Assembly (NCBI RefSeq): GCF_031769215.1 | Contig: NW_026782140.1 | Span: 1,488,001 to 1,552,000, forward strand | Reading direction: 5' to 3' | Length of the DNA: 64,000 nt | DNA from: Ylistrum balloti | Lineage: Eukaryota | In this document: positions 21,026 through 64,000 of the stretch, piece by piece | Layout of the letters: every line of letters starts with the position of its first letter | Position numbering within the stretch: the first letter of the stretch is position 1 | The notes under the pieces: model-generated | Databases searched by the model: none | What the model saw: only the letters and a program-made list of their open reading frames with translations | Told to the model about the DNA's origin: nothing | Translations under genes and position numbers: made by a program

Positions 21026-21183
21026 NNNNNNNNNNNNNNNNNNNNNNNNNNNNNNNNNNNNNNNNNNNNNNNNNNNNNNNNNNNNNNNNNNNNNNNNNNN
21101 NNNNNNNNNNNNNNNNNNNNNNNNNNNNNNNNNNNNNNNNNNNNNNNNNNNNNNNNNNNNNNNNNNNNNNNNNNNNNNNNNNN
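21026..21183. other. Assembly gap (158 N)
   Basis: A run of N characters. Confidence 1.
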
Positions 21184-31765: not shown

Positions 31766-34700
31766 ATGGCTGACATTTCCCAATATGTGATGCCAAATGA
31801 CACTGGTCTATGCCTGTTGGACTGTTGTGCCGCATTTGGGAGTCTGACAGACAGGGAGAAGCTGTATTCACACTATATATCTCAGGCCTCCTGGTATGGG
31901 GGTCTAATTGTTCTGGTACAGGTAAGTCATAAAGTATACTGCACATAAGTATTATGTAAATATACTACTGGTAAGTTATAGATGTAGGTGAACCATGGTT
32001 CAGGTCAGTCATCAGTAAATTATGATACTGATAAGTTATAGATGTAGGTGAACCATGGTTCAGGTCAGTCATCAGTAAATTATACTACTGATAAGTTATA
32101 GATGTAGGTGAACCATGGTTCAGGTCAGTCATCAGTAAATTATGATACTGGTAAGTTATAGATGTAGGTGAACCATGGTTCAAGTCAGTCATCAGTAAAT
32201 TATGATACTGGTAAGTTATAGATGTAGGTGAACCATGGTTCAGGTCAGTCATCAGTAAGTTATGATACTGGTAAGTTCTAGGTGTAGGTGAACAATGCTT
32301 CAGGTCAGTCATCAGTAAATTATGATACTGGTAAGTTATAGATGTAGGTGAACCATGCTTCAGGTCAGTCATCAGTAAGTTATGATACTGGTAAGTTATA
32401 GATGTAGGTGAACCATGGTTCAAGTCAGTCATCAGTACATTATGATACTGGTAAGTTATAGATGTAGGTGAACAATGCTTCAGGTCAGTCATCAGTAAGT
32501 TATGATACTGGTAAGTTATAGATGTAGGTGAACCATGGTTCAGGTCAGTCATCAGTAAATTATGATACGGGTAAGTTATAGATGTAGGTGAACCATGCTT
32601 CAGGCAGTCATCAGTAAATTATGATACTGGTAAGTTATAGGTGTAGGTGAACAATGCTTCAGGTCAGTCATCAGTAAATTATGATACTGGTAAGTTATAG
32701 ATGTAGGTGAACCATGCTTCAGGTCAGTCATCAGTAAGTTATGATACTGGTAAGTTATAGGTGTAGGTGAACCATGGTTCAGGTCAGTCATCAGTAAATT
32801 ATGATACTGGTAAGTTATAGGTGTAGGTGAACCATGGTTCAGGTCAGTCATCAGTAAGTTATGATACTGGTAAGTTATAGATAAATTTCAGTTCTATAAA
32901 CTTATTGGTAAACGATCCACACAGGTTATTAATATATAAGCCCCAGTAACCTCTCTGGTTTTATTTTGGTCAGTATTATCAATTTTGTTAATTTTTTTTT
33001 TTTTTAGACATCTCCCGAATCACCAGGAATTTTTTTGTTGTTGCAAAAAGTTTTCCGGGGACAAACAGTCGACCAGCTAAAGGAGGCGGTGACAAAAGAT
33101 GGCGCTCTGACAGAAGACGATTTTCAGGTAGGAACTCATGTTTGTTCATTGTTGTCTTACAACTACTTTACATTGAGTATCATTGAGGGGAAACATGGGT
33201 CTCTCTGTTCATACATATACTTTTCCTTGTCAATGCTCAAGCAACTTAATTTTTTAAGGCATCTCAAGCAAACATCCCACACTTATAGAGGACCATAATA
33301 TCTCAAACAAGTTGGAGTTTCAGGGTTGTGAGGTCAAATTCGAGGCTGCCATTACTACTTTGTATAAAATCATTTAGCATTCTACCTGCTTCATTGTCAG
33401 AGGGGTTTTGACCAAACTTGATATTTTGAGGGCCATAATATCACAGATTATTTTTAGTTTTGGTTTTGTAGAGTCAAGGTAGCGATTAATTTTTTTAGAA
33501 AATCTTAGTGTCTAGCACTCGAGAGCCTTAATGTTTTCAAGGATTCAGACCAAACTCCTCACATTTGACTACCTTCTGTATTGCTCGTAAGTAAAGGTAG
33601 AACCTGAGGGGATTTGTGTTGTTTATGATTTGTAAGATTTCATTAAAACCACTCATTAAATTTTGTCAGATTCTCTTACATAAGTTCTGATATTTGAAAT
33701 GTTCAGTATTTGGTCATTGTAAAAACTCTATTGATTGATTGTTTTTAAAGACACAAGTGACTCGGATTTCAGAGAAGTTTCATCAAAGAAATGCAACATT
33801 TATGAAATTTATAGGAAATGAAGGAATTTGTAACTACCTGTACCTATAAAATGAAGGAATTTGTAACTACCTGTACCTATAAAATGAAGGAATTTGTAAC
33901 TACCTGTACCTAATGTATAAAATGAAGGAATTTGTAACTACCTGTACCTAATGTATAAAATGAAGGAATTTGTAACTACCTGTACCATGTATAAAATGAA
34001 GGAATTTGTAACTACCTGTACCTATAAAATGAAGGAATTTGTAACTACCTGTACCATGTATAAAATGATGGAATTCGTAACTACCTGTACATAATGTATA
34101 AAATGAAGGAATTTGTAACTACCTGTACATAATGTATAAAATGAAGGAATTTGTAACTACCTGTACCTATAAAATGAAGGAATTTGTAACTACCTGTACC
34201 TAATGTGTATCTTTACAGGCAGTGTTGATTTATGCCTCGGCCTTCTATGCAAACATGGGGAACTATAAATCATTTGGAGACAGCAAGATCATTCCAAATT
34301 TACCAAAGGTAAGTTATAATGGTAATAACTACATATCAATACACATGTGTATATAACTACATATCAATACACATGTGTATATAACTACATATCAATACTC
34401 ATGTGTATATAACTACATATCAATACACATGTGTATATAACTACATATCAATACACATGTGTATATAACTGCATATCAATACACATGTTTTTATAACTAC
34501 ATATCAATACACATGTGTATATAACTACATATCAATACACATGTGTATATAACTACATATCAATACTCATGTGTATATAACTACATATCAATACACATGT
34601 GTATATAACTACATATCAATACACATGTGTATATAACTGCATATCAATACACATGTTTTTATAACTGCATATCAATACACATGTGTATATAACTGCATAT

Positions 34701-40764: not shown

Positions 40765-43700
40765 CTGACCACTATGATGGACAGACTTACTACAGACATA
40801 ATGACCAGTATATATATATATATAAAATACTGACCACTATGATGGACAGACTTACTACAGACATAATAACCAGTATATATATATATATAAAATACTGACC
40901 ACTATGATGGACAGACTTACTACAGACATAATAACCAGTATATATATATATAAAATACTGACCACTATGATGGACAGACTTACTACAGACATAATCACCA
41001 GTATATATATATATACAATACTGACCACTATGATGGACAGACTTACTACAGACATAATAACCAGTATATATATATATAAAATACTGACCACTATGATGGA
41101 CAGACTTACTACAGACATAATCACCAGTATATATATATATACAATACTGACCACTATGATGGACAGACTTTCTTCAGACATAATAACCAAGTCTGTTTCA
41201 GAACTGAAGTTTTTATCTTGAAGAAGATCAATGACAGATAAATTTGGTTTAATTTAGATAGACGTACTAATTTTCTTATATTTACTGTAATATGTACCAA
41301 AATTTTGTGTGTAATGAGATGTATGTTTGAAGGAATACGCTGCCAATGACCTAGAGAGGAACATGCTGGAGGAATACATTGAGAGTTTCACCTCGGGATC
41401 TATACCCTCACACAAAAACGGGTCGAGACATTGGATCAAAAACACAGGTCCTATTGTGGAAACGTAAGTATTATATAACTTTGACAGTAGATATGTACAT
41501 CAGATCACAAATCATTTTCTAATGTTGGGTTCTGGATTACATTTAGCAAGCTTGTCACATGATGTTCAGTGAAGCCAACCAGAAGGAAATCCTACATCAA
41601 ATTGCCCATTCCTGTTAACAGGGCAGTATAAACACAGCAAAGCAATCTTTTTCGACTAGATTATAATTGACCTTTACTTATAATGGCCCTAAATGCTATT
41701 TTTTATTCGTAGTTTGAACGATATTAAAGATATATATTTTGTAGAACAATCCTTTTTATACACCCGTCGGGACATGTTATATTTTCACGTGGGCGGGCAG
41801 GCCGCTGCACATAGGTTTCCATTTAATAACTTGAAGAATTTTTTACAGATTAATTTCAAACTTCGTATGAAGATTTATTACCATAAAAGCCAGATCAAGT
41901 TCGATAACCAACATTTTTCGCCCATTATTTACAGAGTTATGGCTCTTCGTACATTTGCAAAATAGGTTTCCGATCGATAACTTGTCAAATTTTTTACAGT
42001 TTAATTGGAAACTTCACATAAAGGTTTATTACCATAAAAGCCAGAGCCAGGTCAAGATCAATAACCAAAATTTTTCGCCCATTATTTACAGAGTTATGGC
42101 CCTTGGTACATTTGCAAAATAGGTTTCCCCTCAATAACTTGAGTAATTTTTCATTTATTAATTTGAAACTTCATATGAAGGTTTATTACAAAAATAGTTT
42201 TTGACAGGCGTATATTGTTCCGCCCTGCAGTACTCTTGTTTTTTGTGCATTTTTGTTTCAGTATTTTCATTCCTTCATGTTCACAGGTACATTGGCTTCA
42301 TTGAATCATACAGAGACCCATTTGGAATGAGGGGCGAGTTTGAGGGTAGGTCAAATGATATTCAAATGGAGGAGAGAGGTTGAGGGTAGAAAACTGATAT
42401 TCAAATTGAGGAGAGAGTTTGAGGGTAGAAAATAGGTATTTAAATTGAGGCAGGGGAGTTTGAAGTAGGTCAATTGATATTCACAATGAAGGCAGTGTTT
42501 GAGGGTAGGTCAGTGGATATTCAAAATGAGGGGAGCATTGGAGGGTAGGTCAGTGAATATTCAAAAGGAAGGGAGTGTTTGAGGGTAGGTCAGTGGATAT
42601 TCAAAAGGAAGGGAGTGTTTGAGGGTAGGTCAGTGGATCTTCACAATGAGGGGAGTGTTTAAGGGTAGGTCAGTGGATCTTCACAATGAGAGGAGTGTTT
42701 GAGAGTAGGTCAGTGAATATTCAAAAGGAAGGGAGTGTTTGAGGGTAGGTCCGTGAATATTCAAAAGGAAGGGAGTGTTTGAGGGTAGGTCAGTAAATAT
42801 TCAAAAGGAAGTGAGTGTTTGAGGGTAGGTCAGTGAATATTCAAAAGGAAGGGAGTGTTTGAGGGTAGGTCAGTGGATATTCAAAAGGAAGGGAGTGTTT
42901 GAGGGTAGGTCCGTGAATATTCAAAAGGAAGGGAGTGTTTGAGGGTAGGTCAGTGAATATTCAAAAGGAAGGGAGTGTTTGAGGGTAGGTCAGTAAATAT
43001 GCACAATGAGTTGAGTGTTTGAGGGTAGGTCAGTGGATCTTCACAATGAGGGGAGTGTTTGAGGGTAGGTCAGTAGATCTTCACAATGAGGGGAGTGTTT
43101 GAGGGTAGGTCAGTAGATCTTCACAATGAAGGAAGTGTTTGAGGGTAGGTCAGTAGATCTTCACAATGAGGGGAGTGTTTGAGGGTAGGTCAGTAGATCT
43201 TCACAATGAGGGGAGTGTTTGAGGGTAGGTCAGTAGATCTTCACAATGAGGGGAGTGTTTGAGGGTAGGTCAGTTGATCTTCACAATGAGGGGAGTGTTT
43301 GAGGGTAGGTCAGTAGATCTTCACAATGAGGGGAGTGTTTGAGGGTATGTCAGTAGATCTTCACAATGAAGGAAGTGTTTGAGGGTAGGTCAGTAGATCT
43401 TCACAATGAGGGGAGTGTTTGAGGGTAGGTCAGTAGATCTTCACAATGAGGGGAGTGTTTGAGGGTAGGTCAGTAGATCTTCACAATGAAGGAAGTGTTT
43501 GAGGGTAGGTCAGTAGATCTTCACAATGAGGGGAGTGTTTGAGGGTAGGTCAGTGGATCTTCACAATGAGGGGAGTGTTTGAGGGTAGGTCAGTAGATCT
43601 TCACAATGAAGGAAGTGTTTGAGGGTAGGTCAGTGGATCTTCAAATCAAGAGTAGTGTTTTAAGGTAGGTATTTTGATATTCCAACCATGTGTACCTCTA

Positions 43701-46700
43701 CCAGATGTTTATTTGATCATTTTATTTACTGATGACAAGCTAAAGAATGGGTATAGCTAGTTTCAGTGAAACAGACAACTATAAAAACTGGATATGCCAC
43801 CTGGAATTACATCAGAAGTTTTTGTCACTATTGGTGTTGTAGATGAAATTATTTATCGTGTCAGGTTTTGTGGCCGTAGTTAATAAAGAGATGAGTGCCA
43901 AGTTCACCAATCTTGTCACCAACGCAGAGAAGTTTCTACCACTGTTGCCATGGCCAGCATCATTTGAGAAGGACAAATTCTTACGACCTGACTTCACCTC
44001 TCTTGACGTCCTTGCATTTGGAGGATCTGGCATTCCAGCAGGAATCAACATTCCAAACTGTAAGTCAGACTCATGTCTTAAAAGAATCCTGACTTTATCT
44101 GAAAAAAATTAACTGATGTACTCTATAGCATGCTATTGTCATGGGGATGATAATTTTGCTAGTCCGTGGTACAGGAAAATGATTATGAAAAATTAAGTCT
44201 GGAAATAATGAGACACATGGGTATAAGGAAATAGAGACACATGGGTATAAGGAAATAATGAGATACATGGGTATAAGGAAATAATGAGACACATGGGTAT
44301 AAGGAAATATTGAGACACTTGGGTATAAGGAAATATTGAGACACTTGGGTATAAGGAAATATTGAGACACTTGGGTATAAGGAAATATTGAGACACTTGG
44401 ATATAAGGAAATATTGAGACATGTAAGGATAAGGAAATAATGAGACACATGGGTATAAGGAAATATTGAGACACATGGGTATAAGGAAATATTGAGACAC
44501 TTGGATATAAGAAAATATTGAGACATGTAAGGATAAGAAAATAATGAAACACATGAGTATAAAGAAATAATGAGACACATGGGTATAAGGTGTCCTTTTA
44601 CATGAAGATCATGAAATTTCAATCCATTGAAATATAATTTTGATTGTTTTAAAAGAAATCTGCAGAACTTTTCATTTGTAGGTTTTGTTTTAGGGAAACA
44701 GCATGTCCTAGATATTTATACGTGCTGAGTGGTTGTTTGTACAGCTATATTATAGGTATATACATATATATTACATGCATACATGCTGACCTCTAGTTAT
44801 GGCTTGTTTTATGGATTTTTCTCTATACAACATGAAATCAGACGATGACATCCGCCAATCAGAGGGATTTAAGAATGTGTCTCTGGGAAATGTCATAGTA
44901 TCTGCCTACAAGGACACCATGGACAAGATCAGCTTTCTGGCTGAGGAGGACAAGGTCAGTTTATTTAGGATCAGAGTTCGTCAATATATCCATACCCAAT
45001 GATAAAGTTTGTGAATCTAGTTTTCAGGATCACAGTGTGTATATTTTGTATCATTAATAGTTTGTGATGAAGAAATTATCAATTATGTGAAAATATGCAT
45101 TTTTACCATTTTTTAAAAAAGTAACTGACTTTTTGCTTGCAGGAATTATTTGTTAATCTGAAGACAACTACATTTGAAGTCCAAGTGGGTTTACACGAAC
45201 TACTCGGCCATGGTAGTGGAAAGTTGTTTGTCAAGGTGGGTGTTTTTTGTAGTACTCTTGTTACAATCACTGTTAATGTTGAATACACAAAGGCCTCTCA
45301 TAGTTCTCCTGACAAGTTCTATTGAATACAATTAATTTTGGATATACCATGGGGTGGTGGACAGCTGTCTGAGTCAAGATGAATCAAGTTTTTCCATATA
45401 AGTGACTAATAACTAATATCTGAATATTCATTTACACAGGATAAAGAAGGAAATCTCAACTTTGATGTGGCATCAGTGACTGACCCAGAAACAAATAAAA
45501 AGGTGGGTAACACACTGCATGATATTATACTACCACTGTTGTATTTGTAGGATATGTCTAACAGTACCTGTTAATGAGGGAAAGTAACATTGTTACCAGT
45601 ATTACATTTGTAGGATATGTCTAACAGTACCTGTTTATGAGGGAAAGTAACATTGTTACCAGTATTACATTTGTAGGATATGTCTAACAGTACCTGTTTA
45701 TGAGGGAAAGTAACATTGTTACCAGTATTACATTTGTAGGATATGTCTAACGGTGCCTGTTTATGAGGGAAAGTAACATTGTTACCAGTGTTACATTTGT
45801 AGGATATGTCTAACAGTACCTGTTTATGAGGGAAAGTAACATTGTTACCAGTATTACATTTGTAGGATATGTCTAACAGTACCTGTTTATGAGGGAAAGT
45901 AACATTGTTACCAGTGTTACATTTGTAGGATATGTCTAACAGTACCTGTTTATGAGGGAAAGTAACATTGTTACCAGTATTACATTTGTAGGATATGTCT
46001 AACAGTACCTGTTTATGAGGGAAAGTAACATTGTTACCAGTGTTACATTTGTAGGATATGTCTAAAAGTACCTGTTTATGAGGGAAAGTAACATTGTTAC
46101 CAGTATTACATTTGTAGGATATGTCTAACGGTACCTGTTAATGAGGGAAAGTAACATTGTTACCAGTATTACATTTGTAGGATATGTCTAACAGTACCTG
46201 TTTATGAGGGAAAGTAACATTGTTACCAGTGTTACATTTGTAGGATATGTCTAACAGTACCTGTTTATGAGGGAAAGTAACATTGTTACCAGTATTACAT
46301 TTGTAGGATATGTCTAACAGTACCTGTTTATGAGGGAAAGTAACATTGTTACCAGTATTACATTTTCAGGATATGTCTAACAGTACCTGTTTATGAGGGA
46401 AAGTAACATTGTTACCAGTATTACATTTGTAGGATATGTCTAAAAGTACCTGTTTATGAGGGAAAGTAACATTGTTACCAGTGTTACATTTGTAGGATAT
46501 GTCTAAAAGTACCTGTTTATGAGGGAAAGTAACATTGTTACCAGTGTTACATTTGTAGGATATGTCTAACAGTACCTGTTTATGAGGGAAAGTAACATTG
46601 TTACCAGTATTACATTTGTAGAATATATATAATACTACCTGTTTAAGAGAGGCAGTAACACTTGTTACAGATAGAAAAGTAGTTTTGATAAGGAACATGG

Positions 46701-49700
46701 ACAAATAAATAATGTTTACATCCAAACTTGATTTTTTCAGGTAGAGAAGTGGTATGAACACAATGAGTCGTGGGATGGCAAATTTACCACCATAGCTTCC
46801 AGTTACGAAGAATGTCGTGCTGAATGTGTTGGAATCTACCTTTGTCTTTCTGCAGAGGTCCTAAGGTATCAGTAGACAACTGAAGTACAGTCAAACTTTT
46901 ATGAATCGAACTTCGATGTTTTGAATTTCTCAATGTATCAAAGTTTTTGTGTGTTCCCGATATTTAAACCTACATATTACTACTAACTTACCCCTCTATG
47001 AATTGAGTTTTATAAATAGAACTTTACAATGTATGGAAGTTTTTGCAGGGACCATTAGCTATGATAACAATGTAACTGACACCTCATGAATTGAGTTTTA
47101 TAAATAGAACTTTACAATGTATGGAAGTTTTTGCAGGGACCATAAGCTATGATAACAATGTAACTGACACCTCATGAATTGAGTTTTATAAATAGAACTT
47201 TACAATGTATGGAAGTTTTTGCAGGGACCATAAGCTATGATAACAATGTAACTGACACCTCATGAATTGAACAAAATATTTACCTGTATGGATTCTTTCA
47301 ACCCACAGCAAAATTTCAGATATTGTTATCTTACAATGAAATTACAATAGCACGCTATTATCAGCTCTGTGTTACGAGGTAAATTAATGCCTGGACAAAG
47401 ATTAAGATTTAGTTGCTTACTTACATGCCATGATATTTAATCGATGGTAATCGTATGATGTTTATGCTGCCATTGTATTGATGGCATGCAGTTAGGTCTA
47501 ATTTATGGAATTGTGAAAACAACAGGAGGAAATCCTATTACTTGTATGATGATTTCACTAAGTCTCGAAGCGTCTAGAGGTTCTGTAGATATACAGTGTT
47601 TCTGAAGGCTTGGAGATAGGCAGTGTTTCATTTAAACCTCAGTAAATCTCACCTTTTTCTTTGTTGTCAGAATCTTTGGCCATACTGATGATGCTGCTGA
47701 TGATGTAATATACATCAACTGGCTGAATATGGTCCGTGCTGGTCTGCTGGCTCTCGAGTTCTACTCTCCAGAAACAGGTGCTTGGAGACAAGTTAGTACT
47801 TTCTTACACAATAAGTACTTTTGACATTCCTAGTTCTCAAGGAACTTACTTACCAGCAACAAAACACATTACATTTCAAAATGTCATGTGTTAGATGACA
47901 AATTAGAAATTTGTGATTCAGAGAGTGTGACTTTATTACTGTATTTTGTAGAACCACAGCAGGCCTGATTTGTGATCCTGAGAGTGTGACTCTATTACCT
48001 GTATTTTGTAGAACCACAGCAGGCCTGATTTGTGATCCTGAGAGTGTGACTTTATTACCTGTATTTTGTAGAACCACAGCAGGCCTGATTTGTGATCCTG
48101 GGAGTGTGACTCCATTACTGTATTTTGTAGAACCACAGCAGGCCTGATTTGTGATCCTGAGAGTGTGACTTTATTACTGTATTTTGTAGAACCACAGCAG
48201 GCCTGATTTGTGATCCAGAGAGTTTGACTCTATTACAGTATTTTGTAGAACCACAGCAGGCCTGATTTGTGATCCTGAGAGTGTGACATTATTACTGTAT
48301 TTTGTAGAACCACAGCAGGCCTGATTTGTGATCCTGAGAGTGTGACTCTATTACAGTATTTTGTAGAACCACAGCAGGCCTGATTTGTGATCCTGAGAGT
48401 GTGACTCTATTACCTGTATTTTGTAGAACCACAGCAGGCCTGATTTGTGATCCTGAGAGTGTGACTCTATTACCTGTATTTTGTAGAACCACAGCAGGCC
48501 TGATTTGTGATCCTGAGAGTGTGACTTTATTACCTGTATTTTGTAGAACCACAGCAGGCCTGATTTGTGATCCTGAGAGTGTGACTCTATTACTGTATTT
48601 TGTAGAACCACAGCAGGCCTGATTTGTGATCCTGAGAGTGTGACTCTATTACTGTATTTTGTAGAACCACAGCAGGCCTGATTTGTGATCCTGAGAGTGT
48701 GACTGAGAGTGTGACTCTATTACTGTATTTTGTAGAACCACAGCAGGCCTGATTTGTGATCCTGAGAGTGTGACTCTATTACTGTATTTTGTAGAACCAC
48801 AGCAGGCCTGATTTGTGATCCTGAGAGTGTGACTCTATTACCTGTATTTTGTAGAACCACAGCAGGCCTGATTTGTGCTCCTGAGAGTTTGACTCTATTA
48901 CCTGTATTTTGTAGAACCACAGCAGGCCTGATTTGTGCTCCTGAGAGTTTGAATCTATTACCTGTATTTTGTAGAACCACAGCAGGCCTGATTTGTGCTC
49001 CTGAGAGTTTGAATATATTACCTGTATTTTGTAGAACCACAGCAGGCCTGATTTGTGATCCTGAGAGTGTGACTCTATTACCTGTATTTTGTAGAACCAC
49101 AGCAGGCCTGATTTGTGCTCCTGAGAGTTTGAATCTATTACCTGTATTTTGTAGAACCACAGCAGGCCTGATTTGTGATTTTGAGCCAACAGTATAGTTG
49201 TAACACAATGTTATTGAATTTAACATGTTGATGTTTTGTTAACTTTATTTCTATAACATCATTTTTGTTTTTATCATTTGATAATTGTTTCCACTACTAC
49301 TACTACTGCTATTATTTAGAGGGCTTTAATACCCATTTATGTATTTTAGGCTCACATGCAGGCCCGATTTGTGATCCTAAGGGTGTTGCTGGAGGCTGGT
49401 AAGGGACTGGTCACAATAAAATACTTCACTGCTGCTGATGGAAGCGAGGACATGTTGCTCAAGTTGGATCGCAGTAAGATCATCTCTGTTGGCAAACCAG
49501 CTATTGGTGACTTCCTCAGGAAGCTTCAGGTAGGTTTTTCATGTTGACTATAAAATTTGTTAGCAAAGGTAGAATCCCCTGTACTGGTATTTCAAAGAAA
49601 AATGAGATACAATGTATATTTCATTATAATTTTTATGGAACAGACTTTAACTTTTCTGCATTTCATCTTTTCTTGTAAAGGAATTTTTCATTGTATACTA

Positions 49701-51231
49701 ATTAAGTCTTAATGCAAGATGTCAATTAAATGGTTAGTATACAACACTGACCTCAATGTATAAACCAGGTTTACAAGTCCAGTAGTGACCTCGATGTGTA
49801 AACCAGGTTTACATGTCCAGTAGTGACCTTGATGTGTAAACCAGGTTTACAAGTCCAGTAGTGACCTCGATGTGTAAACCAGGTTTACATGTCCAGTAGT
49901 GACCTCGATGTGTAAACCAGGTTTACATGTCCAGTAGTGACCTTGATGTGTAAACCAGGTTTACATGTCCAGTAGTGACCTCGATGTGTAAACCAGGTTT
50001 ACATGTCCAGTAGTGACCTTGATGTGTAAACCAGGTTTACATGTCCAGTAGTGACCTTGATGTATAAACCAGGTTTACATGTCCAGTAGTGACCTTGATG
50101 TGTAAACCAGGTTTACATGTCCAGTAGTGACCTAGATGTATAAACCAGGTTTACATGTCCAGTAGTGACCTCGATGTGTAAACCAGGTTTACATGTCCAG
50201 TAGTGACCTTGATGTGTAAACCAGGTTTACATGTCCAGTAGTGACCTCGATGTATAAACCAGGTTTACATGTCCAGTAGTGACCTCGATGTGTAAACCAG
50301 GTTTACATGTCCAGTAGTGACCTCGATGTATAAAACAGGTTTACATGTCCATTAGTGACCTCGATGTATAAACCAGGTTTACATGTCCAGTAGTGACCTC
50401 GATGTATAAACCAGGTTTACATGTCCAGTAGTGACCTTGATGTGTAAACCAGGTTTACATGTCCAGTAGTGACCTTGATGTATAAACCAGGTTTACATGT
50501 CCAGTAGTGACCTTGATGTGTAAACCAGGTTTACATGTCCAGTAGTGACCTTGATGTATAAACCAGGTTTACATGTCCAGTAGTGACCTCGATGTGTAAA
50601 CCAGGTTTACATGTCCAGTGGTGACCTCGATGTGTAAACCAGTTTTACATGTCCAGTAGTGACCTTGATGATATCATAGTAACAAAGTTAATAAGTCTAA
50701 TAGCAACCTTTATGATATTGTTTTAACCAGGTGTACAAGTCCACAGGTGATGTTGAGGCAGGAAAGGCCTTGTATTTATACTACTCAGATGTACATGATC
50801 GCGAGGAACCCCACTTTTTGACGAGACGTGCCACTGTCCTTGCCAGGAAACAGCCAAGGAAAATGTTTGTCCAGCACAACACTGTCGTCAATGGTATGTA
50901 AATGCACATGTGAATTTTAACCAAAATTTTCTATTTATGTGAAAAAATTGGAGAAATTATATTTTTTCCACCAAATTCGAAATTGACATGATTTGTATCG
51001 GTGACGGATATTATATCAAATGTAGGCAATATCATAAATTTGAAACATGATAATATTCAGCTAGAAGTGCCAAATTTGTGTTTTTTTTCTTTTTCAGGCA
51101 GCACAGTAGATCTGAAGAGTTATGACTCAAATGTGACTGGTCTCATCCAATCCTTCGCTGATCGTTTCCCTTCCACTGATGTTGATACCATTATACAGGG
51201 GCTGTGGGAGAAAGACAAACCATACTTCTAA
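31766..51231 (+). CDS. DPP3: Dipeptidyl peptidase 3 (M49 zinc peptidase), 731 aa, 18 coding exons
   Basis: Exons: 31766-31921, 33008-33127, 34219-34308, 36133-36270, 37940-38014, 38507-38597, 40274-40422, 41333-41463, 42287-42345, 43865-44059, 44842-44954, 45143-45235, 45440-45502, 46741-46865, 47671-47791, 49350-49529, 50731-50893 and 51098-51231. All junctions are GT-AG and the total is 2196 nt in frame. Motifs include [46 protein letters not shown] (45194-45211), EECRAE and AHMQARF. Confidence 0.97.
31960..32885. repeat. 60-bp minisatellite in DPP3 coding intron 1, about 15 copies
   Basis: Unit gtaagttatagatgtaggtgaaccatggttcaggtcagtcatcagtaaattatgatactg. Confidence 0.95.
33815..34205. 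repeat. Minisatellite of about 32-39 bp abutting the acceptor of DPP3 coding exon 3
   Basis: Unit aaatgaaggaatttgtaactacctgtacc(taatg)tata, about 11 copies. Confidence 0.9.
34325..35860. repeat. 28-bp minisatellite just after the donor of DPP3 coding exon 3, about 55 copies
   Basis: Unit tataact(a/g)catatcaatacacatgtgta. Confidence 0.95.
36900..37855. repeat. Minisatellite of about 41-47 bp with a variable (TA)n tract
   Basis: Unit atgtacagtgtagtgtatccatggtagaaacctata(ta)n. Confidence 0.9.
40575..41190. repeat. About 61-bp minisatellite with an embedded (TA)n tract
   Basis: Unit (ta)n-aaatactgaccactatgatggacagacttactacagacataat(c/a)accag, about 10 copies. Confidence 0.9.
41745..42245 (+). 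mobile_element. Non-autonomous Helentron/HINE-like element in DPP3 coding intron 8
   Basis: It starts tttttatacacccg, has a ggcgggcaggc microsatellite-like tract, carries a duplicated internal block (ataggtttcc...ataaccaa...tttttcgcccattatttacagagttatggc) and ends gtactcttgtttttt. Confidence 0.55.
42346..43670. repeat. 40-bp minisatellite starting at the donor of DPP3 coding exon 9, about 33 copies
   Basis: Unit gagggtaggtcagt(a/g)gatcttcacaatgaggggagtgttt. Confidence 0.95.
44200..44590. repeat. 26-bp minisatellite, about 14 copies
   Basis: Unit gagacac(a/t)tgggtataaggaaata(a/t)t. Confidence 0.9.
45540..46625. repeat. 63-bp minisatellite, about 17 copies
   Basis: Unit gatatgtctaacagtacctgtttatgagggaaagtaacattgttaccagtattacatttgtag. 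Confidence 0.95.
46999..47272. repeat. 88-bp tandem repeat, 3 copies
   Basis: tgaattgagttttataaatagaactttacaatg...gacacctca, period checked at 46999/47087. Confidence 0.9.
47905..49185. repeat. About 60-bp minisatellite upstream of DPP3 coding exon 16, about 21 copies
   Basis: Unit tattacctgtattttgtagaaccacagcaggcctgatttgtgatcctgagagtgtgactc. Confidence 0.95.
49755..50670. repeat. 38-bp minisatellite upstream of DPP3 coding exon 17, about 24 copies
   Basis: Unit gt(g/a)taaaccaggtttaca(t/a)gtccagtagtgacct(t/c)gat. Confidence 0.95.
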
Positions 51232-53137: not shown

Positions 53138-53975
53138 ATTTATTAGGATTATGGTGGGGTATTCAAATCGCCTGCGTCTGTGGTCCGTCGTCCATCCGTA
53201 AACAATTCTTGTTACCGCTATTTCTGGGAAAGTACTGGATGGATCTTTCTCAAATTTCATATGCAGTTTCCCCATGGTCCCTAGTTGTGCATTGTACCTT
53301 TTTTGGACTGATTCGAATTCAAGATGGCCGACAGGCAGCCATCTTGGATTTTGGAAGTAAAAGTTTATTACCGCTATTTCTGGGAAAGAACTGGATGGTC
53401 CCTATTTGTACCTTTTTTCAAATGTCATATACAGGTTCTTGGATTTTGGAAGTAAAAGTTTGTTACCGCTATTTCTGGGAAAGTACTGGATGGATCTTTC
53501 TCAAATTTCATATATGGTTGTTTATTGTACCTTTTTTGGACTGATTTGAATTCAAGATGACCGACAGGCAGCCATCTTGGATTTTGGAAGTAAAAGTTTG
53601 TTACCGCTATTTCTGGGAAAGTACTGGATGGATCTTTCTCAAATGTCATATACAGGTTTCTAGTTGTGCATTGTACCTTTTTTTCATTCAAGATGACCGA
53701 CAGGCAATGATTTTGGAAGTAAAAGTTTGTTACCGCTATTTCTTGGAAAGTTCCCTCAAATTTCATATGCAGTTTCCCCATGGTCCCTAGTTGTGCATTG
53801 TACCTTTTTTGGACTGATTTGAATTCAAGATGACCGACAGGCAGCCATCTTGGATTTTGGAAGTAAAAGTTTGTTACCGCTATTTCTGGGAAAGTACTGG
53901 ATGGATCTTTCTCAGATTTCATATGCAGGTTCCTCAAATGGTGGGCGCCAAGATCCCACTGGGATCTCTTGTTGT
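53138..53975 (+). mobile_element. Non-autonomous Helentron/HINE-like element with internal tandem repeats
   Basis: It begins at a T-run (tttattagg), has a gtccgtcgtccatccgt microsatellite and about 5 partly deleted internal repeats (tgttaccgctatttctgggaaagtactggatggatctttctcaaat...ggcagccatcttggattttggaagtaaaag). A 3' hairpin AGATCCC-ACT-GGGATCT is followed by cttgtt. Confidence 0.65.
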
Positions 53976-54925: not shown

Positions 54926-56258
54926 TACTGAACCCCATAGAAAGTACATTTTCACGTCAAAACTTTTTAATGTGACCTTTTGTATACTACTGTCAATATC
55001 AATAATATAAGTTGTGAGTGAAAATGGTTGAATGACATGCTTTTTGGTCACTTCCGACATTGTTCACACCGACACATGCGCAATGCGTAAAATCGTTTAT
55101 TCTGCACGTACATACACGGGTTTTGCCAATACGTATGAATTTCCACCGATACATATCCTTTATAAAGTGGTCCGTCCCAAAAACATTCATTCGGTGAGGG
55201 TAGCGTGAATAATGCTCATGAAACGCGATGCCACGAGTAACACAATTGCAGAGAGGAATGACTCTTGGAAGTTTGCAGGCGGGTACTTCCGCCACTATTG
55301 TAGCCAGGCGCTTGGTATGTCATGTTAGCACTATCACAGTCTTGCTGAACGCTTTCAACATACGGACTCTGTTTCTGATCGATCCCGGAAGGGAAAACCA
55401 AGGATTAACAACCTCAGGCCCAAGATTGCTACACCCGGATAACTCGCCTTCTTATCTAGACCAATCTTGTTGATTGGCGACGAGTTCTCTTCTCAGACGA
55501 GTCTCGATACCATCTTTCCCATGTTGATGGCCTGGTGCGTGTGTGGTGTCGACGTAACGAACGTCGCTGTGTCCTGCATGCTAACAGGTGGGGTGGCGGC
55601 AGCGTGATGGTGTGGGGAACCTTTAGTTTCCACCATCTGACACCCCTTCACGTCTTCCGTAATCGTGTAACAGGAGTGGTACACAGGAATGGCGTTCTTA
55701 GGCCTTACGTCGTTCTCTGGTTTGTTGCACAGCCTTAACAGCAGTTTTACCTGCAAGACAACGCCCGTTCCCACACGGCTCGAGTACCTATGGGTTTCCT
55801 TACACAGAATAAAGTGAATGTCCTGCCTTGGTCGTCTCTTTCACCAGATAAGGCACCGATAGAACATGTGTGGGATGAAATTGGGAGAAGAATCGCTGGT
55901 GGTCGAATCTGTTGACGTTCACACAGCTGGAACAGAGACTCCTCAAGGAATAGAACAATTTGCTCCAGGCATTCTTCCAGCCTCTCGGCAATTCCATAAG
56001 ACGACATTACACAGCCTTTACCAATGCCCAAGGCGGACAGGCGCATTATTGACTGATTTGTGATTTTCCTTTCACGGAGATACCTTCATTAAATAAACAA
56101 TAGAAATTGTAAAGTTTATGAAGTGAAATCTAGCCACATTTTGTTTAATTGCAATTTTAACAAACTATTGAATAACTCAGTAAAAATTCAATTCCTTTTT
56201 AAATTTCTTATCAAAACGTATCTTTATTCGGACATGCGTTTCTTTTGGGGCTCTGTCT
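54926..56258 (+). mobile_element. Second decayed Tc1-family (DD34E) transposon
   Basis: Fragments are MPRVTQLQRGMTLGSLQAG (HTH), VLFSDESR, WGGGSVMVWG, QDNARSHTAR and APIEHVWDEIGRR, with 34 residues between D and E. Degenerate TIRs are tactgaaccccatagaaag and tttcttttggggctctgt. The coding region is frameshifted. Confidence 0.88.
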
Positions 56259-60544: not shown

Positions 60545-61330
60545 CGGTCAGGAGGTCTATAGTAGGGGTACAACGGTCGGAAGGTTTGAAGGAGGTGTAC
60601 ATGGGTCGGAAGGTTTGTATGAGATGTACGGCGGTCGGGATGTCGGTATGAGACGTACGGCGGTCGGAAGGTTTGAAGGAGGTGTACAAGGGTCGGAAGG
60701 TTTGTATGAGATGTACGGCAGTCAGGACGTCTGTATGAGATATACGGTAGTCGGAAGGTCTGTATGAGATGAACGGCGGTCGTTACGTTTGTAGGTGTAC
60801 GACAGCAGAGTGATCTGTAGGAGGTGTACGACGGTAGAGTGATCTGTAGGAGGTGTACGACGGTTCAGTGGTCTGTATGAGGTGTACGACGGTAGAGTGG
60901 TCTGTACGAGGTGTACGACAGTAGAGTGATCTGTAGGAGATGTACGACGGTAGAGTGGTCTGTAGGAGGTGTGCGACGGTAGAGTGGTCTGTAGGTGTAC
61001 CACGTTAGAGTGGTCTGTAGGAGGTGTACGACGGCAGAGTGGTATGTAGGAGGTGTACGACGTTAGAGTGGTCTGTAGGAGGTGTAAGACAGTAGAGTGG
61101 TCTGTAGGAGGTGTGCGACGGTAGAGTGATCTGTAGGAGGTTTACGACGGTAGAGTGGTCTGTAGGAGATGTACGACGGTAGAGTGGTCTGTAGGAGGTG
61201 TGCGACGGTAGAGTGATCTGTAGGAGATGTACGACGGTAGAGTGGTATGTAGGAGATGTACGACGGTAGAGTGATCTGATGGAGGTGTACGACGGTAGAG
61301 TGGTATGTAGGAGGTGTACGACGGTCTAGA
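60545..61330 (+). repeat. About 29-bp G-rich satellite array A
   Basis: Unit gaggtgtacgacggtagagtggtctgtag, with diverged ggtcggaagg variants at the left end. Confidence 0.9.
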
Positions 61331-61859
61331 CGTCTTATGAGATTTACGACATATGGTATCTGAAGTGTATGATATGGTCGAGGGTCTGTCAGTTGTTCAC
61401 GGTGTGTTGGTCAGGAGTCCTATGGATGACCTGTAACAAGTAAAATTTATCTTAAATAGGATCATGTAATATGCATTTAGAGCGGCTGAAGGGGACAATG
61501 GGTTGATGCATGAATCTAAGACACACCCTCTTTGAATCTCTCCGGTTTAGATTGGGCTATTTGAGTAAATACCGTTTCACCAAATACCTCACTAAACTGG
61601 CCATAATAGCTCCTTTCGCGGTAAAGCTGTTCCTATATTTAGGTACACGTGTATCTTAGAATGAAATCATGCGGAACTCTTCTCATACGATCTGTCATCC
61701 GATCAGGATAAGCACCCAACTTGAGGAAGTATCAGCGATAAAGGAACTTCTTTGTATAACTCACTGTGTAGTAAGACAAATTTATGATAACTATCATCCA
61801 CTCCGTTGTAAACTATTTATATCAATATTTAATATATTTTATTCCTGAATCATATTATA

Positions 61860-63022
61860 GACACCCGACATATCCTAAAGAGTCAGACCAACATACACCT
61901 CCTACAGACAGACCCAACGGACGTACACATTCTACAGACCCCGACCAACGTAAACCTCCTACAGACCCCGACCAACGTACACCTTCTACAGACACGACTA
62001 ACGTACACCTCCTACAGACAGACCCAACGGACGTACACATTCTACAGACCCCGACCAACGTAAACCTCCTACAGACCCCGACCAACGTACACCTTCTACA
62101 GACACGACTAACGTACACCTCCTACAGACACGACCAACGTACACCTTCTACAGACCCTGACCAACCTACACCTCCTACAGACCTCACCAACCTACACCTC
62201 CTACAGACCCCAACAAACGTACACCTACAGACCTGACCAACCTACACCTTCTACAGACACGACCAACAAACACCTCCTACAGACAACACCCACGAACACC
62301 TCCTACAGACCCCACACAACGTCCACCTCCTACAGACCCGACCAACCTATACCTCCTACAGACACGACCAACATACACCTCCTACAGACACGACCAAACT
62401 ACACATTCTACAGACCCCCACCAACGTACAACCCCTACAGACCCCGACCAACATACACCTCATACAGACACGACCAACATACACCTCCTTCAGACACGAC
62501 CAACCTACACCTCATACAGACCCCGACCAACGTACACATTCTACAGACCCCGACCAACGTACACCTCCTACAGACCCCCACCAACGTACACTTCCTACAG
62601 ACCCCGACCAACGTACACATTCTACAGACCCCGACCAACGTACACCTCCTACAGACCCCAACCAACGTCCACCTCCTACAGACCCCGACCAACGTACACC
62701 TCCTACAGACCCCCACCAACGTACACTTCCTACAGACCCCGACCAACGTACACATTCTACAGACCCCGACCAACGTACACCTCCTACAGACCCCGACCAA
62801 CGTACACCTCCTACAGACCCCAACCAACGTCCACCTCCTACAGACCCCTACCAACGTACACCTCCTACAGACCTCGACCAACGTACACCTCCTACAGACC
62901 CCAACAAACGTACACCTACAGACCTGACCAACCTACACCTTCTACAGACACGACCAACAAACACCTCCTACAGACCCCAACCAACGTCCACCTCCTACAG
63001 ACCCCACACAACGTCCACCTCC
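61860..63022 (-). repeat. About 27-bp C-rich satellite array B, a reverse-complement relative of array A
   Basis: Unit cctcctacagaccccgaccaacgtaca. Its reverse complement contains GTCTGTAGGAGGTGTAC, as in array A. Confidence 0.9.
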
Positions 63023-64000
63023 TGAGAGGTCAGTAAACCAATGTACACTTCCTACAGTGAGAGGTCAAAACATGTTTTACCTTCAGACTGAGTGAGAGGT
63101 CAGTAAACATGATCTACCTTCAGACTGAGTGAGAGGTCAGTAAACATGTTTTACCTTCAGACTGAGTGAGAGGTCAGTAAACATGATCTACCTTCAGACT
63201 GAGTGAGAGGTCAGTAAACATGTTTTACCTTCAGACTGAGTGAGAGGTCAGTAAACATGATCTACCTTCAGACTGAGTGAGAGGTCAGTAAACATGTTTT
63301 ACCTTCAGACTGAGTGAGAGGTCAGTAAACATCATCCACATTCAGACTGAGTGAGAGGTCAGTAAACATTATCTTCCTTCAGACTGAGTGAGAGGTCAGT
63401 AAACATGATCTACCTTCAGACTGAGTGAGAGGTCAGTAAACATCATCCACATTCAGACTGAGTGAGAGGTCAGTAAACATGTTTTACCTTCCTTCACAGA
63501 CTGTCAGTGAGAGGTCAGTAAACATGAGATCTACCTTCAGACTGAGTGAGAGGGTAAACATGTTTTACCTTCAAACAGTAGGTATATTCAGACTGAGCGA
63601 GAGGTCAGTAAACATTATCTTCCTTCAGACTGAGTGAGAGGTCAGTAAATATGATCAACCCTCAGACTGAGTGAGAGGTCAGTAAACATGTTTTACCTTC
63701 AGATTGAGTGAGAGGTCAGTAAACATTATCTACCTTCAGACTGAGTGAGAGGTCAGTAAACATGTTCTACCTTCAGACTGAGTGAGACTGAGTGAGAGGT
63801 CAGTAAACACCTTCAGACTGAGTGAGAGGTCAGTAAACATGATCTACCTTCAGACTGAGTGAGAGGTCAGTAAACATGTTCTACCTTCAGACTGAGTGAG
63901 AGGTCAGTAAACATGTTCTACCTTCAGACTGAGTGAGAGGTCAGTAAACATCATCCACATTCAGACTGAGTGAGAGGTCAGTAAACATGTTTTACCTTCA
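63023..64000. repeat. 37-bp minisatellite running off the window end, at least 25 copies
   Basis: Unit gagaggtcagtaaacatg(tt/at)(t/c)taccttcagactgagt, period checked at 63131/63168. Confidence 0.95.

What the first reader, a model, noticed from the sequence alone, without database searches (positions are those of the whole stretch)
31905..50765. Candidate system: DPP3 intronic minisatellites repeatedly seeded from the gene's own splice junctions
Seen: four unrelated arrays (60, 40, 60 and 38 bp units) each contain a near-copy of the adjacent exon-intron boundary. Two are donors (coding exons 1 and 9) and two are acceptors (coding exons 16 and 17), all in sense orientation and on the intronic side, with the exon left intact. 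Matches are 15/17, 26/28, 26/29 and 18/19 nt. Most other DPP3 introns longer than 500 bp also hold arrays, often starting close to a splice site. Established: single VNTRs spanning splice sites are known, but four independent cases in one gene is beyond chance. Inference: either a mutational process focused on junctions (slippage or repair templated at R-loops or spliceosome-paused sites) or neutral duplication filtered by selection. The result is banks of decoy or spare splice sites that could shift junctions, feed NMD or tune expression by copy number.
Basis: partly seen in the sequence, partly recalled or inferred. Interest (0 to 1): 0.85.

Follow-up and report, generated by a model that had tools for sequence, protein, structure and literature searches.

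The report
Splice-junction minisatellites in scallop DPP3
Four introns of this DPP3 gene hold tandem repeats copied from their own exon-intron junction; the structure is real, but it is a repeat type already known from amphioxus and human genes, and its count here is about what random local duplication in short, repeat-prone introns would give.

Summary
An 18-exon DPP3 gene (31766-51231, + strand, 722 aa) has tandem arrays in 13 of its 17 introns, covering 58% of intron sequence.

Four arrays carry sense copies of the adjacent junction:
- Exon 9 donor, exon 16 acceptor and exon 17 acceptor: each match scores above all 1500 random control windows.
- Exon 1 donor: weaker but probably real, with two 12/14 copies of the junction per 60-bp unit.

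The claim "beyond chance" does not hold for placement. If each array is seeded at a random place in its array-free intron (175-800 bp for the array-bearing introns), 2.0-3.2 junction-spanning arrays are expected, and P(>=4) is 0.11-0.41. Array positions within introns also fit a uniform distribution.

Three more distant relatives, of unknown species, have the same exon boundaries. Their introns 9, 15 and 16 are 106-330 bp long and hold no arrays.

My best reading is neutral local tandem duplication, kept only where the exon-adjacent splice site still wins. This kind of repeat is already described as amphioxus "mirages" and in human F7, IFI6, CBS and LMNB2. The scan's earlier notes report the same thing on at least seven other pieces of this genome, which they call the scallop Ylistrum balloti.

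Use of the decoy sites, and any effect through NMD (nonsense-mediated mRNA decay), could not be tested here. One oddity remains: the exon 16 array sits 145 nt away from its source junction.

The parts
31766..51231 (+). DPP3 gene, coding part: 18 exons, 722 aa, Peptidase_M49
   Evidence: tblastn of a full-length DPP3 protein covers residues 1-726 in 18 pieces. Splice sites were chosen by frame and best protein score. The spliced ORF has no internal stop and is 62% identical to vertebrate DPP3.
31913..31935 (+). Source junction 1: end of exon 1 plus donor (CAG|GTAAGT, intron starts at 31922)
31956..32882 (+). Array A1: 60-bp unit x15. Each unit holds two diverged copies of the exon 1 donor junction (TACTGGTAAGTTAT and TTCAGGTCAGTCAT); 27 donor-like sites in all.
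   Evidence: TRF; two 12/14 hits per unit and controls; site counts; flank alignment z=3.6
42324..43670 (+). Array A8: 40-bp unit, 33 copies counting the true one. The first monomer is the last 22 nt of exon 9 plus the donor (intron starts at 42346). 23 copies, counting the true donor, carry the true donor's exact 15-mer TTTGAGG|GTAGGTCA. The three copies nearest the exon are degraded (GTAGAA twice, one deletion).
47909..49179 (+). Array A12: 60-bp unit x21. The whole unit is homologous to -27..+37 around the exon 16 acceptor; 21 decoy acceptors TATTTTGTAG|AACCACAGCAGGCC.
49180..49322 (+). Spacer between A12 and its source junction. It is unrelated to the unit and unique in the window.
   Evidence: no hit elsewhere in the window; no similarity to the unit beyond shuffles
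49323..49386 (+). Source junction 3: last 27 nt of intron 15 plus first 37 nt of exon 16 (exon starts at 49350, codes [12 protein letters not shown])
   Evidence: alignment to the unit; exon start conserved at the same position in two relatives
49748..50670 (+). Array A13: 38-bp unit x24; 22 decoy acceptors AAACCAG|GTTTACATGTCC
50671..50767 (+). One decayed in-register copy of the A13 unit, then the true exon 17 acceptor and exon start (exon starts at 50731)
   Evidence: co-linear alignment scores 22 against a shuffle maximum of 19, z=8; exon start conserved in relatives
33816..34206 (+). Array A2 (about 36-38 bp) in intron 2. It ends 12 nt before the exon 3 acceptor and holds no junction copy.
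34325..35861 (+). Array A3 (28 bp x55) in intron 3. It starts 16 nt after the exon 3 donor and holds no junction copy.
36934..37843 (+). Array A4 (39 bp) in intron 4, no junction copy
38115..38242 (+). Array A5 (40 bp x3) in intron 5, no junction copy
40587..41189 (+). Array A6 (63-65 bp) in intron 7, no junction copy
41811..42189 (+). Array A7 (157 bp x2.5) in intron 8, no junction copy
44201..44590 (+). Array A9 (26 bp x15) in intron 10, no junction copy
45531..46668 (+). Array A10 (63 bp x18). It fills most of intron 13 and holds no junction copy.
46984..47270 (+). Array A11 (88 bp x3) in intron 14, no junction copy

Best explanation
These are 'mirage'-type minisatellites: by-products of ordinary local tandem duplication in a genome that makes minisatellites at a very high rate.

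Proposed sequence of events:
1. A 26-160-bp stretch of a short ancestral intron is duplicated in place, by replication slippage or unequal exchange.
2. The duplicate then expands and is homogenised into an array.
3. When the first duplicated stretch happens to straddle an exon-intron boundary, every unit carries a copy of the exon end or start plus its splice site.
4. Such arrays survive only if they grow on the intron side and the splice site next to the real exon keeps being used: the first donor or the last acceptor. That is why all copies are in sense orientation and the exons are intact.

Shown:
- The units descend from the adjacent junctions.
- The exon sides are the older sequence.
- The number and position of junction arrays fit random seeding.

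Inferred:
- The duplication mechanism.
- That the true sites are the ones used.
- That the decoy sites are mostly silent.
For: 1. Descent from the local junction. Three of the four unit-to-junction matches exceed all 1500 random windows and all non-adjacent junctions. The exon 1 case is supported by two 12/14 copies per unit.
2. Contiguity. The first A8 monomer is itself the exon 9 end plus donor. A13 is linked to exon 17 by one decayed in-register copy.
3. Polarity. The exon 9 end and the exon 16 and 17 starts are conserved coding sequence at the same positions in three other species, whose introns there are 106-330 bp with no tandem repeats.
4. Local origin. No unit occurs anywhere else in the 64-kb window.
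5. Chance placement. Random seeding predicts 2.0-3.2 junction arrays out of 13, with P(>=4)=0.11-0.41. Array positions are uniform. Nine arrays have no junction copy.
6. Filtering. Tandem repeats cover 58% of intron bases, 28% of the flanking sequence and 0% of exon bases.
7. The genome is repeat-prone. Tandem repeats are the largest repeat class (21.7%) in a moon scallop assembly (PMC10225492).
8. Precedent. Mirages occur at both 5' and 3' boundaries without disturbing splicing (PMC3087553; PMC3902484). In human F7 only the first donor is used (PMC1557585).
Against: - The exon 16 array is not contiguous with its source. A 145-nt unrelated spacer lies between them, so a simple in-place duplication needs an extra event: an insertion into the last copy, or a short-range templated copy.
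- Intron repeat density (58%) is twice that of the flanks (28%), which could hint at a transcription-linked process. This is one gene only.
- The null model rests on 13 arrays in a single gene, so it cannot exclude a modest (about 2-fold) enrichment at junctions.
- Other follow-ups in this scan, on other genes, judged the frequency above chance and biased to donors. I did not test those claims.
- Use of the true splice sites is inferred from the intact conserved ORF, not from RNA.
Confidence: 0.75

Rival explanations
1. A mutational process focused on splice junctions (for example slippage or repair at R-loops or at sites where the spliceosome pauses transcription) seeds arrays preferentially at exon-intron boundaries.
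For: - Four of 13 arrays are junction-derived.
- Two further arrays abut exon 3 within 12-16 nt.
- Intron repeat density is twice that of the flanks.
- Some earlier notes of this scan on other genes report an excess and a donor bias (untested here).
Against: - The count fits random seeding (expected 2.0-3.2, P(>=4)=0.11-0.41).
- Positions are uniform.
- Nine of the 13 arrays have no junction copy, and the two arrays flanking exon 3 do not include its junctions.
- Donors and acceptors are hit equally, 2 to 2.
Confidence: 0.1
2. The arrays are selected banks of decoy or spare splice sites that tune DPP3 output through unproductive splicing and NMD, with copy number as the dial.
For: - About 100 splice-site-like copies lie in four introns.
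- 23 copies in intron 9, counting the true donor, share its exact 15-mer.
- The A12 decoy acceptors have a pyrimidine tract as good as the true one (my reading).
- Any use of a decoy would meet a stop codon.
Against: - The arrays are absent from three relatives with the same exon structure.
- The decoys nearest the true exon 9 donor are degraded, as is the copy next to the exon 17 acceptor.
- Most arrays in the same gene carry no splice site at all.
- In amphioxus, and in several of the human cases (F7, LMNB2, PDGF), such decoys are silent; in IFI6 and CBS only the two nearest are used.
- There are no RNA data.
Confidence: 0.07
3. The arrays, or their lengths, are assembly artefacts, or they belong to a dispersed satellite or transposon family that only resembles the junctions.
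For: Long, near-identical arrays are hard to assemble, and the window holds one assembly gap elsewhere (21026-21183).
Against: - The units contain 17-37 nt of gene-specific coding sequence from the adjacent exon only.
- The arrays show ordered internal variants and decayed edge copies.
- No unit occurs elsewhere in the window.
- All four are in sense orientation.
- Copy number itself cannot be checked here.
Confidence: 0.04

Closest known systems
Amphioxus 'mirage' minisatellites (Adh3, globins BflGb6 and BflGb9, troponin C, PGBD5)
   Same: Both are tandem minisatellite-size repeats whose unit spans an exon-intron boundary. Both occur at 5' and at 3' boundaries, and several genes are affected. 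Edge copies escape homogenisation. Regular splicing is reported as undisturbed (PMC3087553; PMC3902484).
   Different: - The host is a mollusc, not a cephalochordate.
- Four junction arrays lie in one gene, alongside nine non-junction arrays.
- Copy numbers are higher (15-33 against 3-6 in the globins).
- One array is displaced 145 nt from its source.
- Length polymorphism and splicing are not tested here.
Human donor-spanning VNTRs: F7 intron 7 (37 bp), IFI6 (6-16) intron 2, CBS intron 13, LMNB2, PDGF intron 4
   Same: The first monomer spans the exon-intron boundary, so the true donor is followed by identical pseudo-donors. The most upstream site is used, alone or with the next one or two (PMC1557585). 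The exon 9 array here has exactly this layout.
   Different: The human cases named in that paper are donor-side only; here two of the four arrays are acceptor-side. There are no functional data here. The copies nearest the exon 9 donor have degraded, whereas the F7 copies are identical.
Ordinary intronic minisatellites of scallop genomes
   Same: The nine other DPP3 arrays, and the arrays outside the gene, have the same unit sizes and identities. Tandem repeats are the largest repeat class in a moon scallop assembly (PMC10225492).
   Different: The four arrays discussed here differ only in that their founding unit happened to include a junction.

Membership tests
Mirage / boundary-spanning minisatellite | Head-to-tail array of minisatellite-size units | tested here: met
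   TRF: 60 bp x15, 40 bp x30, 60 bp x21 and 38 bp x24, with 92-95% matches
Mirage / boundary-spanning minisatellite | The unit contains the exon end or start plus the splice site of the adjacent junction, in sense orientation | tested here: met
   Scores of 15-22.5, above all 1500 random windows, for three arrays. Two 12/14 copies per unit for the exon 1 donor. Alignments.
Mirage / boundary-spanning minisatellite | The array is contiguous with the true junction (the first or last monomer spans the boundary) | tested here: inconclusive
   Met for the exon 9 donor. Met for the exon 17 acceptor through one decayed copy. Weakly met for the exon 1 donor (44-nt flank, z=3.6). Not met for the exon 16 acceptor, which has a 145-nt unrelated spacer.
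Mirage / boundary-spanning minisatellite | The true site is still used and the mRNA is normal | not testable with these tools
   Indirect evidence only: the intact 722-aa ORF with conserved exon boundaries. There are no transcripts of this species.
Mirage / boundary-spanning minisatellite | Length instability or polymorphism between alleles | not testable with these tools
   Only one haplotype is available.
Dispersed satellite or transposon-borne array | The same unit is present at unrelated loci | tested here: not met
   blastn of all 13 units against the window gives no hit outside the unit's own array, apart from a TA run. This covers 64 kb only.

The most novel reading that the evidence does not exclude
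In this scallop lineage, minisatellite birth may be coupled to splice junctions or to transcription. Array formation would then be genuinely enriched at exon-intron boundaries genome-wide. The resulting banks of roughly 100 decoy sites in a housekeeping gene would leak into NMD, making expression depend on array length. The displaced exon 16 array could then be a trace of a templated copying step that is not tandem duplication.
Probability: 0.1. Interest if true: 0.7.

Novelty: new member of a known kind. Interest (0 to 1): 0.3.

Why it matters
This is a clean natural example of how much splice-site redundancy a housekeeping gene can carry. About 100 near-perfect decoy donors and acceptors sit in four introns of one gene, on both the donor and the acceptor side. 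That makes the gene a usable test bed for the 'first donor / last acceptor' rules worked out on human F7. It also shows that minisatellite growth can lengthen introns several-fold.

As biology it is not new. The repeat type is described in amphioxus and in human genes, and the count here needs no special mechanism. The useful lesson for the scan is a method: junction arrays should be judged against random seeding in array-collapsed introns, not against sequence coincidence.

Tried and rejected
1. Fetching orthologous introns from close scallop relatives failed.
- The representative search with exon 10 returned only distant full-length proteins.
- The full-length search with the best of these turned out to be koala-centred and listed only vertebrates.
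- The exon 16 search found nothing above 79% identity.
- Aligning the 18 exon peptides onto a full-length scaffold, to make a scallop-weighted profile, gave stretched and unusable MAFFT alignments with every scaffold set tried. I therefore did not spend the third search.
- Only three more distant relatives of unknown species could be read (L001 from GCA_013332915.1; L002-L004 and L005 from Logan runs).

2. The exon 16 spacer as decayed repeat copies: rejected, because it shows no similarity beyond shuffles. The spacer as a copy of the left flank, or of anything else in the window: rejected. Its origin stays open.

3. Arrays A2 and A3 as further junction copies: rejected. They abut exon 3 but do not include its junctions.

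4. Per-copy identity profiles with free end gaps gave an inflated baseline of about 80%, so I did not use them.

5. Other genes in the window as extra test cases: Pfam found only an RNase H remnant and a weak DDE_3 match, so there was no second gene model to test.

6. The original mirage paper (PMC117041) is not held. I rely on two papers that cite it.
Full report
**What is in the window**

Tandem Repeats Finder reports arrays over 35% of the 64-kb window, both inside and outside the gene. A full-length DPP3 protein found through the exon 10 peptide aligns to the + strand in 18 pieces that cover its residues 1-726. Choosing GT/AG sites by reading frame and best protein score gives 18 coding exons (31766-51231). 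The spliced ORF is 722 aa with no internal stop and is about 62% identical to vertebrate DPP3.

Thirteen of the 17 introns hold one array each. Arrays make up 10,075 of 17,297 intron bases (58%), against 28% of the flanking sequence and none of the exon bases. Twelve of the 13 introns longer than 500 bp hold an array; intron 6 is the exception. With each array collapsed to one unit, the array-bearing introns shrink to 175-800 bp. They are long because of the arrays.

**Checking the four claimed junction copies**

I scored each repeat unit (doubled) against 50-nt windows centred on all 34 junctions and against 1500 random windows of unique sequence.
- Exon 9 donor, exon 16 acceptor and exon 17 acceptor score 22.5, 16.5 and 15.0.
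- For these three units the background means are 5.6-6.0, no random window reaches the observed score, and non-adjacent junctions reach at most 7-10.

The exon 9 case is the textbook form. The last 22 nt of exon 9 plus the first 18 nt of the intron are themselves the first monomer. There are 33 copies in all. Twenty-three of them, counting the true donor, carry the identical 15-mer TTTGAGG|GTAGGTCA. The three copies nearest the exon are degraded: two have GTAGAA and one has a deletion.

The exon 17 array ends 60 nt before the acceptor. That gap is one decayed copy in register, and a single co-linear alignment runs from it through the acceptor into the exon (score 22, shuffle maximum 19, z=8).

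The exon 16 unit is homologous over its whole 60 nt to positions -27..+37 around the acceptor (40/49 with gaps, 26/29 in the core), and there are 21 decoy acceptors.

The exon 1 case is weaker. It scores 12 (p=0.003), and the non-adjacent exon 3 donor scores 11, so the shared GGTAAGT consensus explains much of the match. However, the 60-bp unit contains two diverged copies of the 14-mer TACAGGTAAGTCAT at 12/14 each, 33 nt apart. Wherever one copy differs from the junction, the other agrees with it. None of the other 16 donors hits the unit, and only 1 in 10,000 random 16-mers gives two separated hits. I take this as a real but older case.

**Which sequence is the source**

Three loci from other species carry the same exon boundaries:
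- L001, from assembly GCA_013332915.1
- L002-L004, from Logan runs
- L005, from a Logan run

Amino-acid identity to the window's exons is about 72-86% for exons 10 and 14-16 and lower (38-72%) for the other exons they cover. In these loci intron 9 is about 330 bp, intron 15 is 140-175 bp and intron 16 is 106-170 bp, and TRF finds no arrays. The exon 9 end and the exon 16 and 17 starts are conserved coding sequence at the same positions. So the exon sides are ancestral, and the repeat units are derived from them. None of the 13 units occurs anywhere else in the window, which argues for local origin and against a dispersed satellite.

**Is four beyond chance?**

As sequence similarity, yes: these are copies, not coincidences. 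As placement, no.

If each array starts from a tandem duplication of a unit-length stretch placed uniformly in the array-collapsed gene or in its own collapsed intron, 2.0-3.2 of the 13 arrays are expected to straddle a junction. This allows only placements that lie in an intron or straddle a junction. The range covers different minimum overlaps required for detection and both versions of the model. P(>=3) is 0.31-0.67 and P(>=4) is 0.11-0.41.

The relatives suggest the ancestral introns were even shorter, which would raise the expectation. The distance from each array to its nearer junction, relative to the maximum possible, averages 0.41 against 0.50 expected (P=0.14; Kolmogorov-Smirnov p=0.55). 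Nine arrays hold no junction copy. Two of them press against exon 3, ending 12 nt before its acceptor and starting 16 nt after its donor, without including either junction.

Sense orientation and intact exons follow automatically from in-place tandem duplication plus the loss of any variant that disrupts the coding sequence. They are not extra evidence for a special process.

**Mechanism**

I conclude that these are ordinary local tandem duplications in a genome with a very high rate of minisatellite formation. They are kept when the splice site next to the real exon still wins. The duplication step and the silence of the decoys are inferred.

Published work supports this reading. In human F7 only the most upstream of the identical donors is used, and in IFI6 and CBS only the first two or three (PMC1557585). 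In amphioxus, mirages at both 5' and 3' boundaries leave splicing intact, and edge copies escape homogenisation (PMC3087553; PMC3902484). Tandem repeats are the largest repeat class, 21.7% of the assembly, in the moon scallop Amusium pleuronectes (PMC10225492).

Any use of a decoy here would meet a stop codon. The frame running on from exon 9 stops after 11 more codons, and two of the three frames of the exon 16 spacer, and all three frames of the stretch before exon 17, contain stops. Leakage would therefore probably feed NMD. Whether it occurs cannot be told without RNA.

**What remains odd**

The exon 16 array is not contiguous with its source. A 145-nt stretch (49180-49322) lies between them. 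It has no similarity to the unit, to the left flank or to anything else in the window. The array starts and ends in the motif ATTTGTGAT, which corresponds to exon positions +20 to +29. The spacer may be a later insertion into the last copy. In that case the array-free intron would be about 150 bp, like the relatives' introns. Alternatively the founding copy was placed a short distance upstream by template switching. I could not decide between these. Intron repeat density is also twice that of the flanks, but one gene cannot carry that point.

**Comparison and verdict**

The structures meet the sequence-level definition of mirage or boundary-spanning minisatellites. Contiguity is met for two arrays, weakly met for one and not met for one. 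Splicing and polymorphism could not be tested.

The scan's earlier notes report the same phenomenon on at least seven other pieces of this genome and name the species as Ylistrum balloti. I used them as leads to the two papers, which I then read. I did not verify the species.

This is a new member of a known kind, of modest interest. It is a good natural test bed for splice-site choice, but not a new mechanism.

Noticed in passing
window 33816-35861: Exon 3 (34219-34308, 90 nt) is sandwiched between two arrays. One ends 12 nt before its acceptor and the other starts 16 nt after its donor. The branch-point and pyrimidine region of intron 2 therefore lies at or inside the array edge.
   Followed up: partly
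window 49374-49382 compared with array 47909-49179 and L001, L002: At a synonymous site of exon 16 (ATC CTA AGG) the scallop exon has A. The repeat unit and both relatives have G (CTG or TTG). The array may preserve the older state of the exon. This is a single site, so it is only a hint.
   Followed up: no
window 30166-31700: A retroelement remnant lies directly upstream of the DPP3 start codon. The ORF at 31164-31487 matches Pfam RNase_H (E=1.2e-5), and the neighbouring ORF at 30166-30657 looks like reverse transcriptase by eye.
   Followed up: partly
window 55222-55912: A Tc1/mariner-like transposase remnant. There is only a weak Pfam DDE_3 match (E=0.0046, below the curated cut-off).
   Followed up: partly
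window 53186-53925: An irregular block of six copies of a 78-nt segment at spacings of 95-156 nt, plus three copies of a 150-nt segment, downstream of DPP3. TRF does not report it.
   Followed up: partly
window 38598-40300: Intron 6 (1703 bp) is the only long DPP3 intron without a tandem array. Its acceptor is also the least certain splice site of the gene model.
   Followed up: no
window 60568-64000: An almost continuous run of different arrays (29, 27 and 37 bp units) with higher G+C (45-48%) runs off the end of the window.
   Followed up: no
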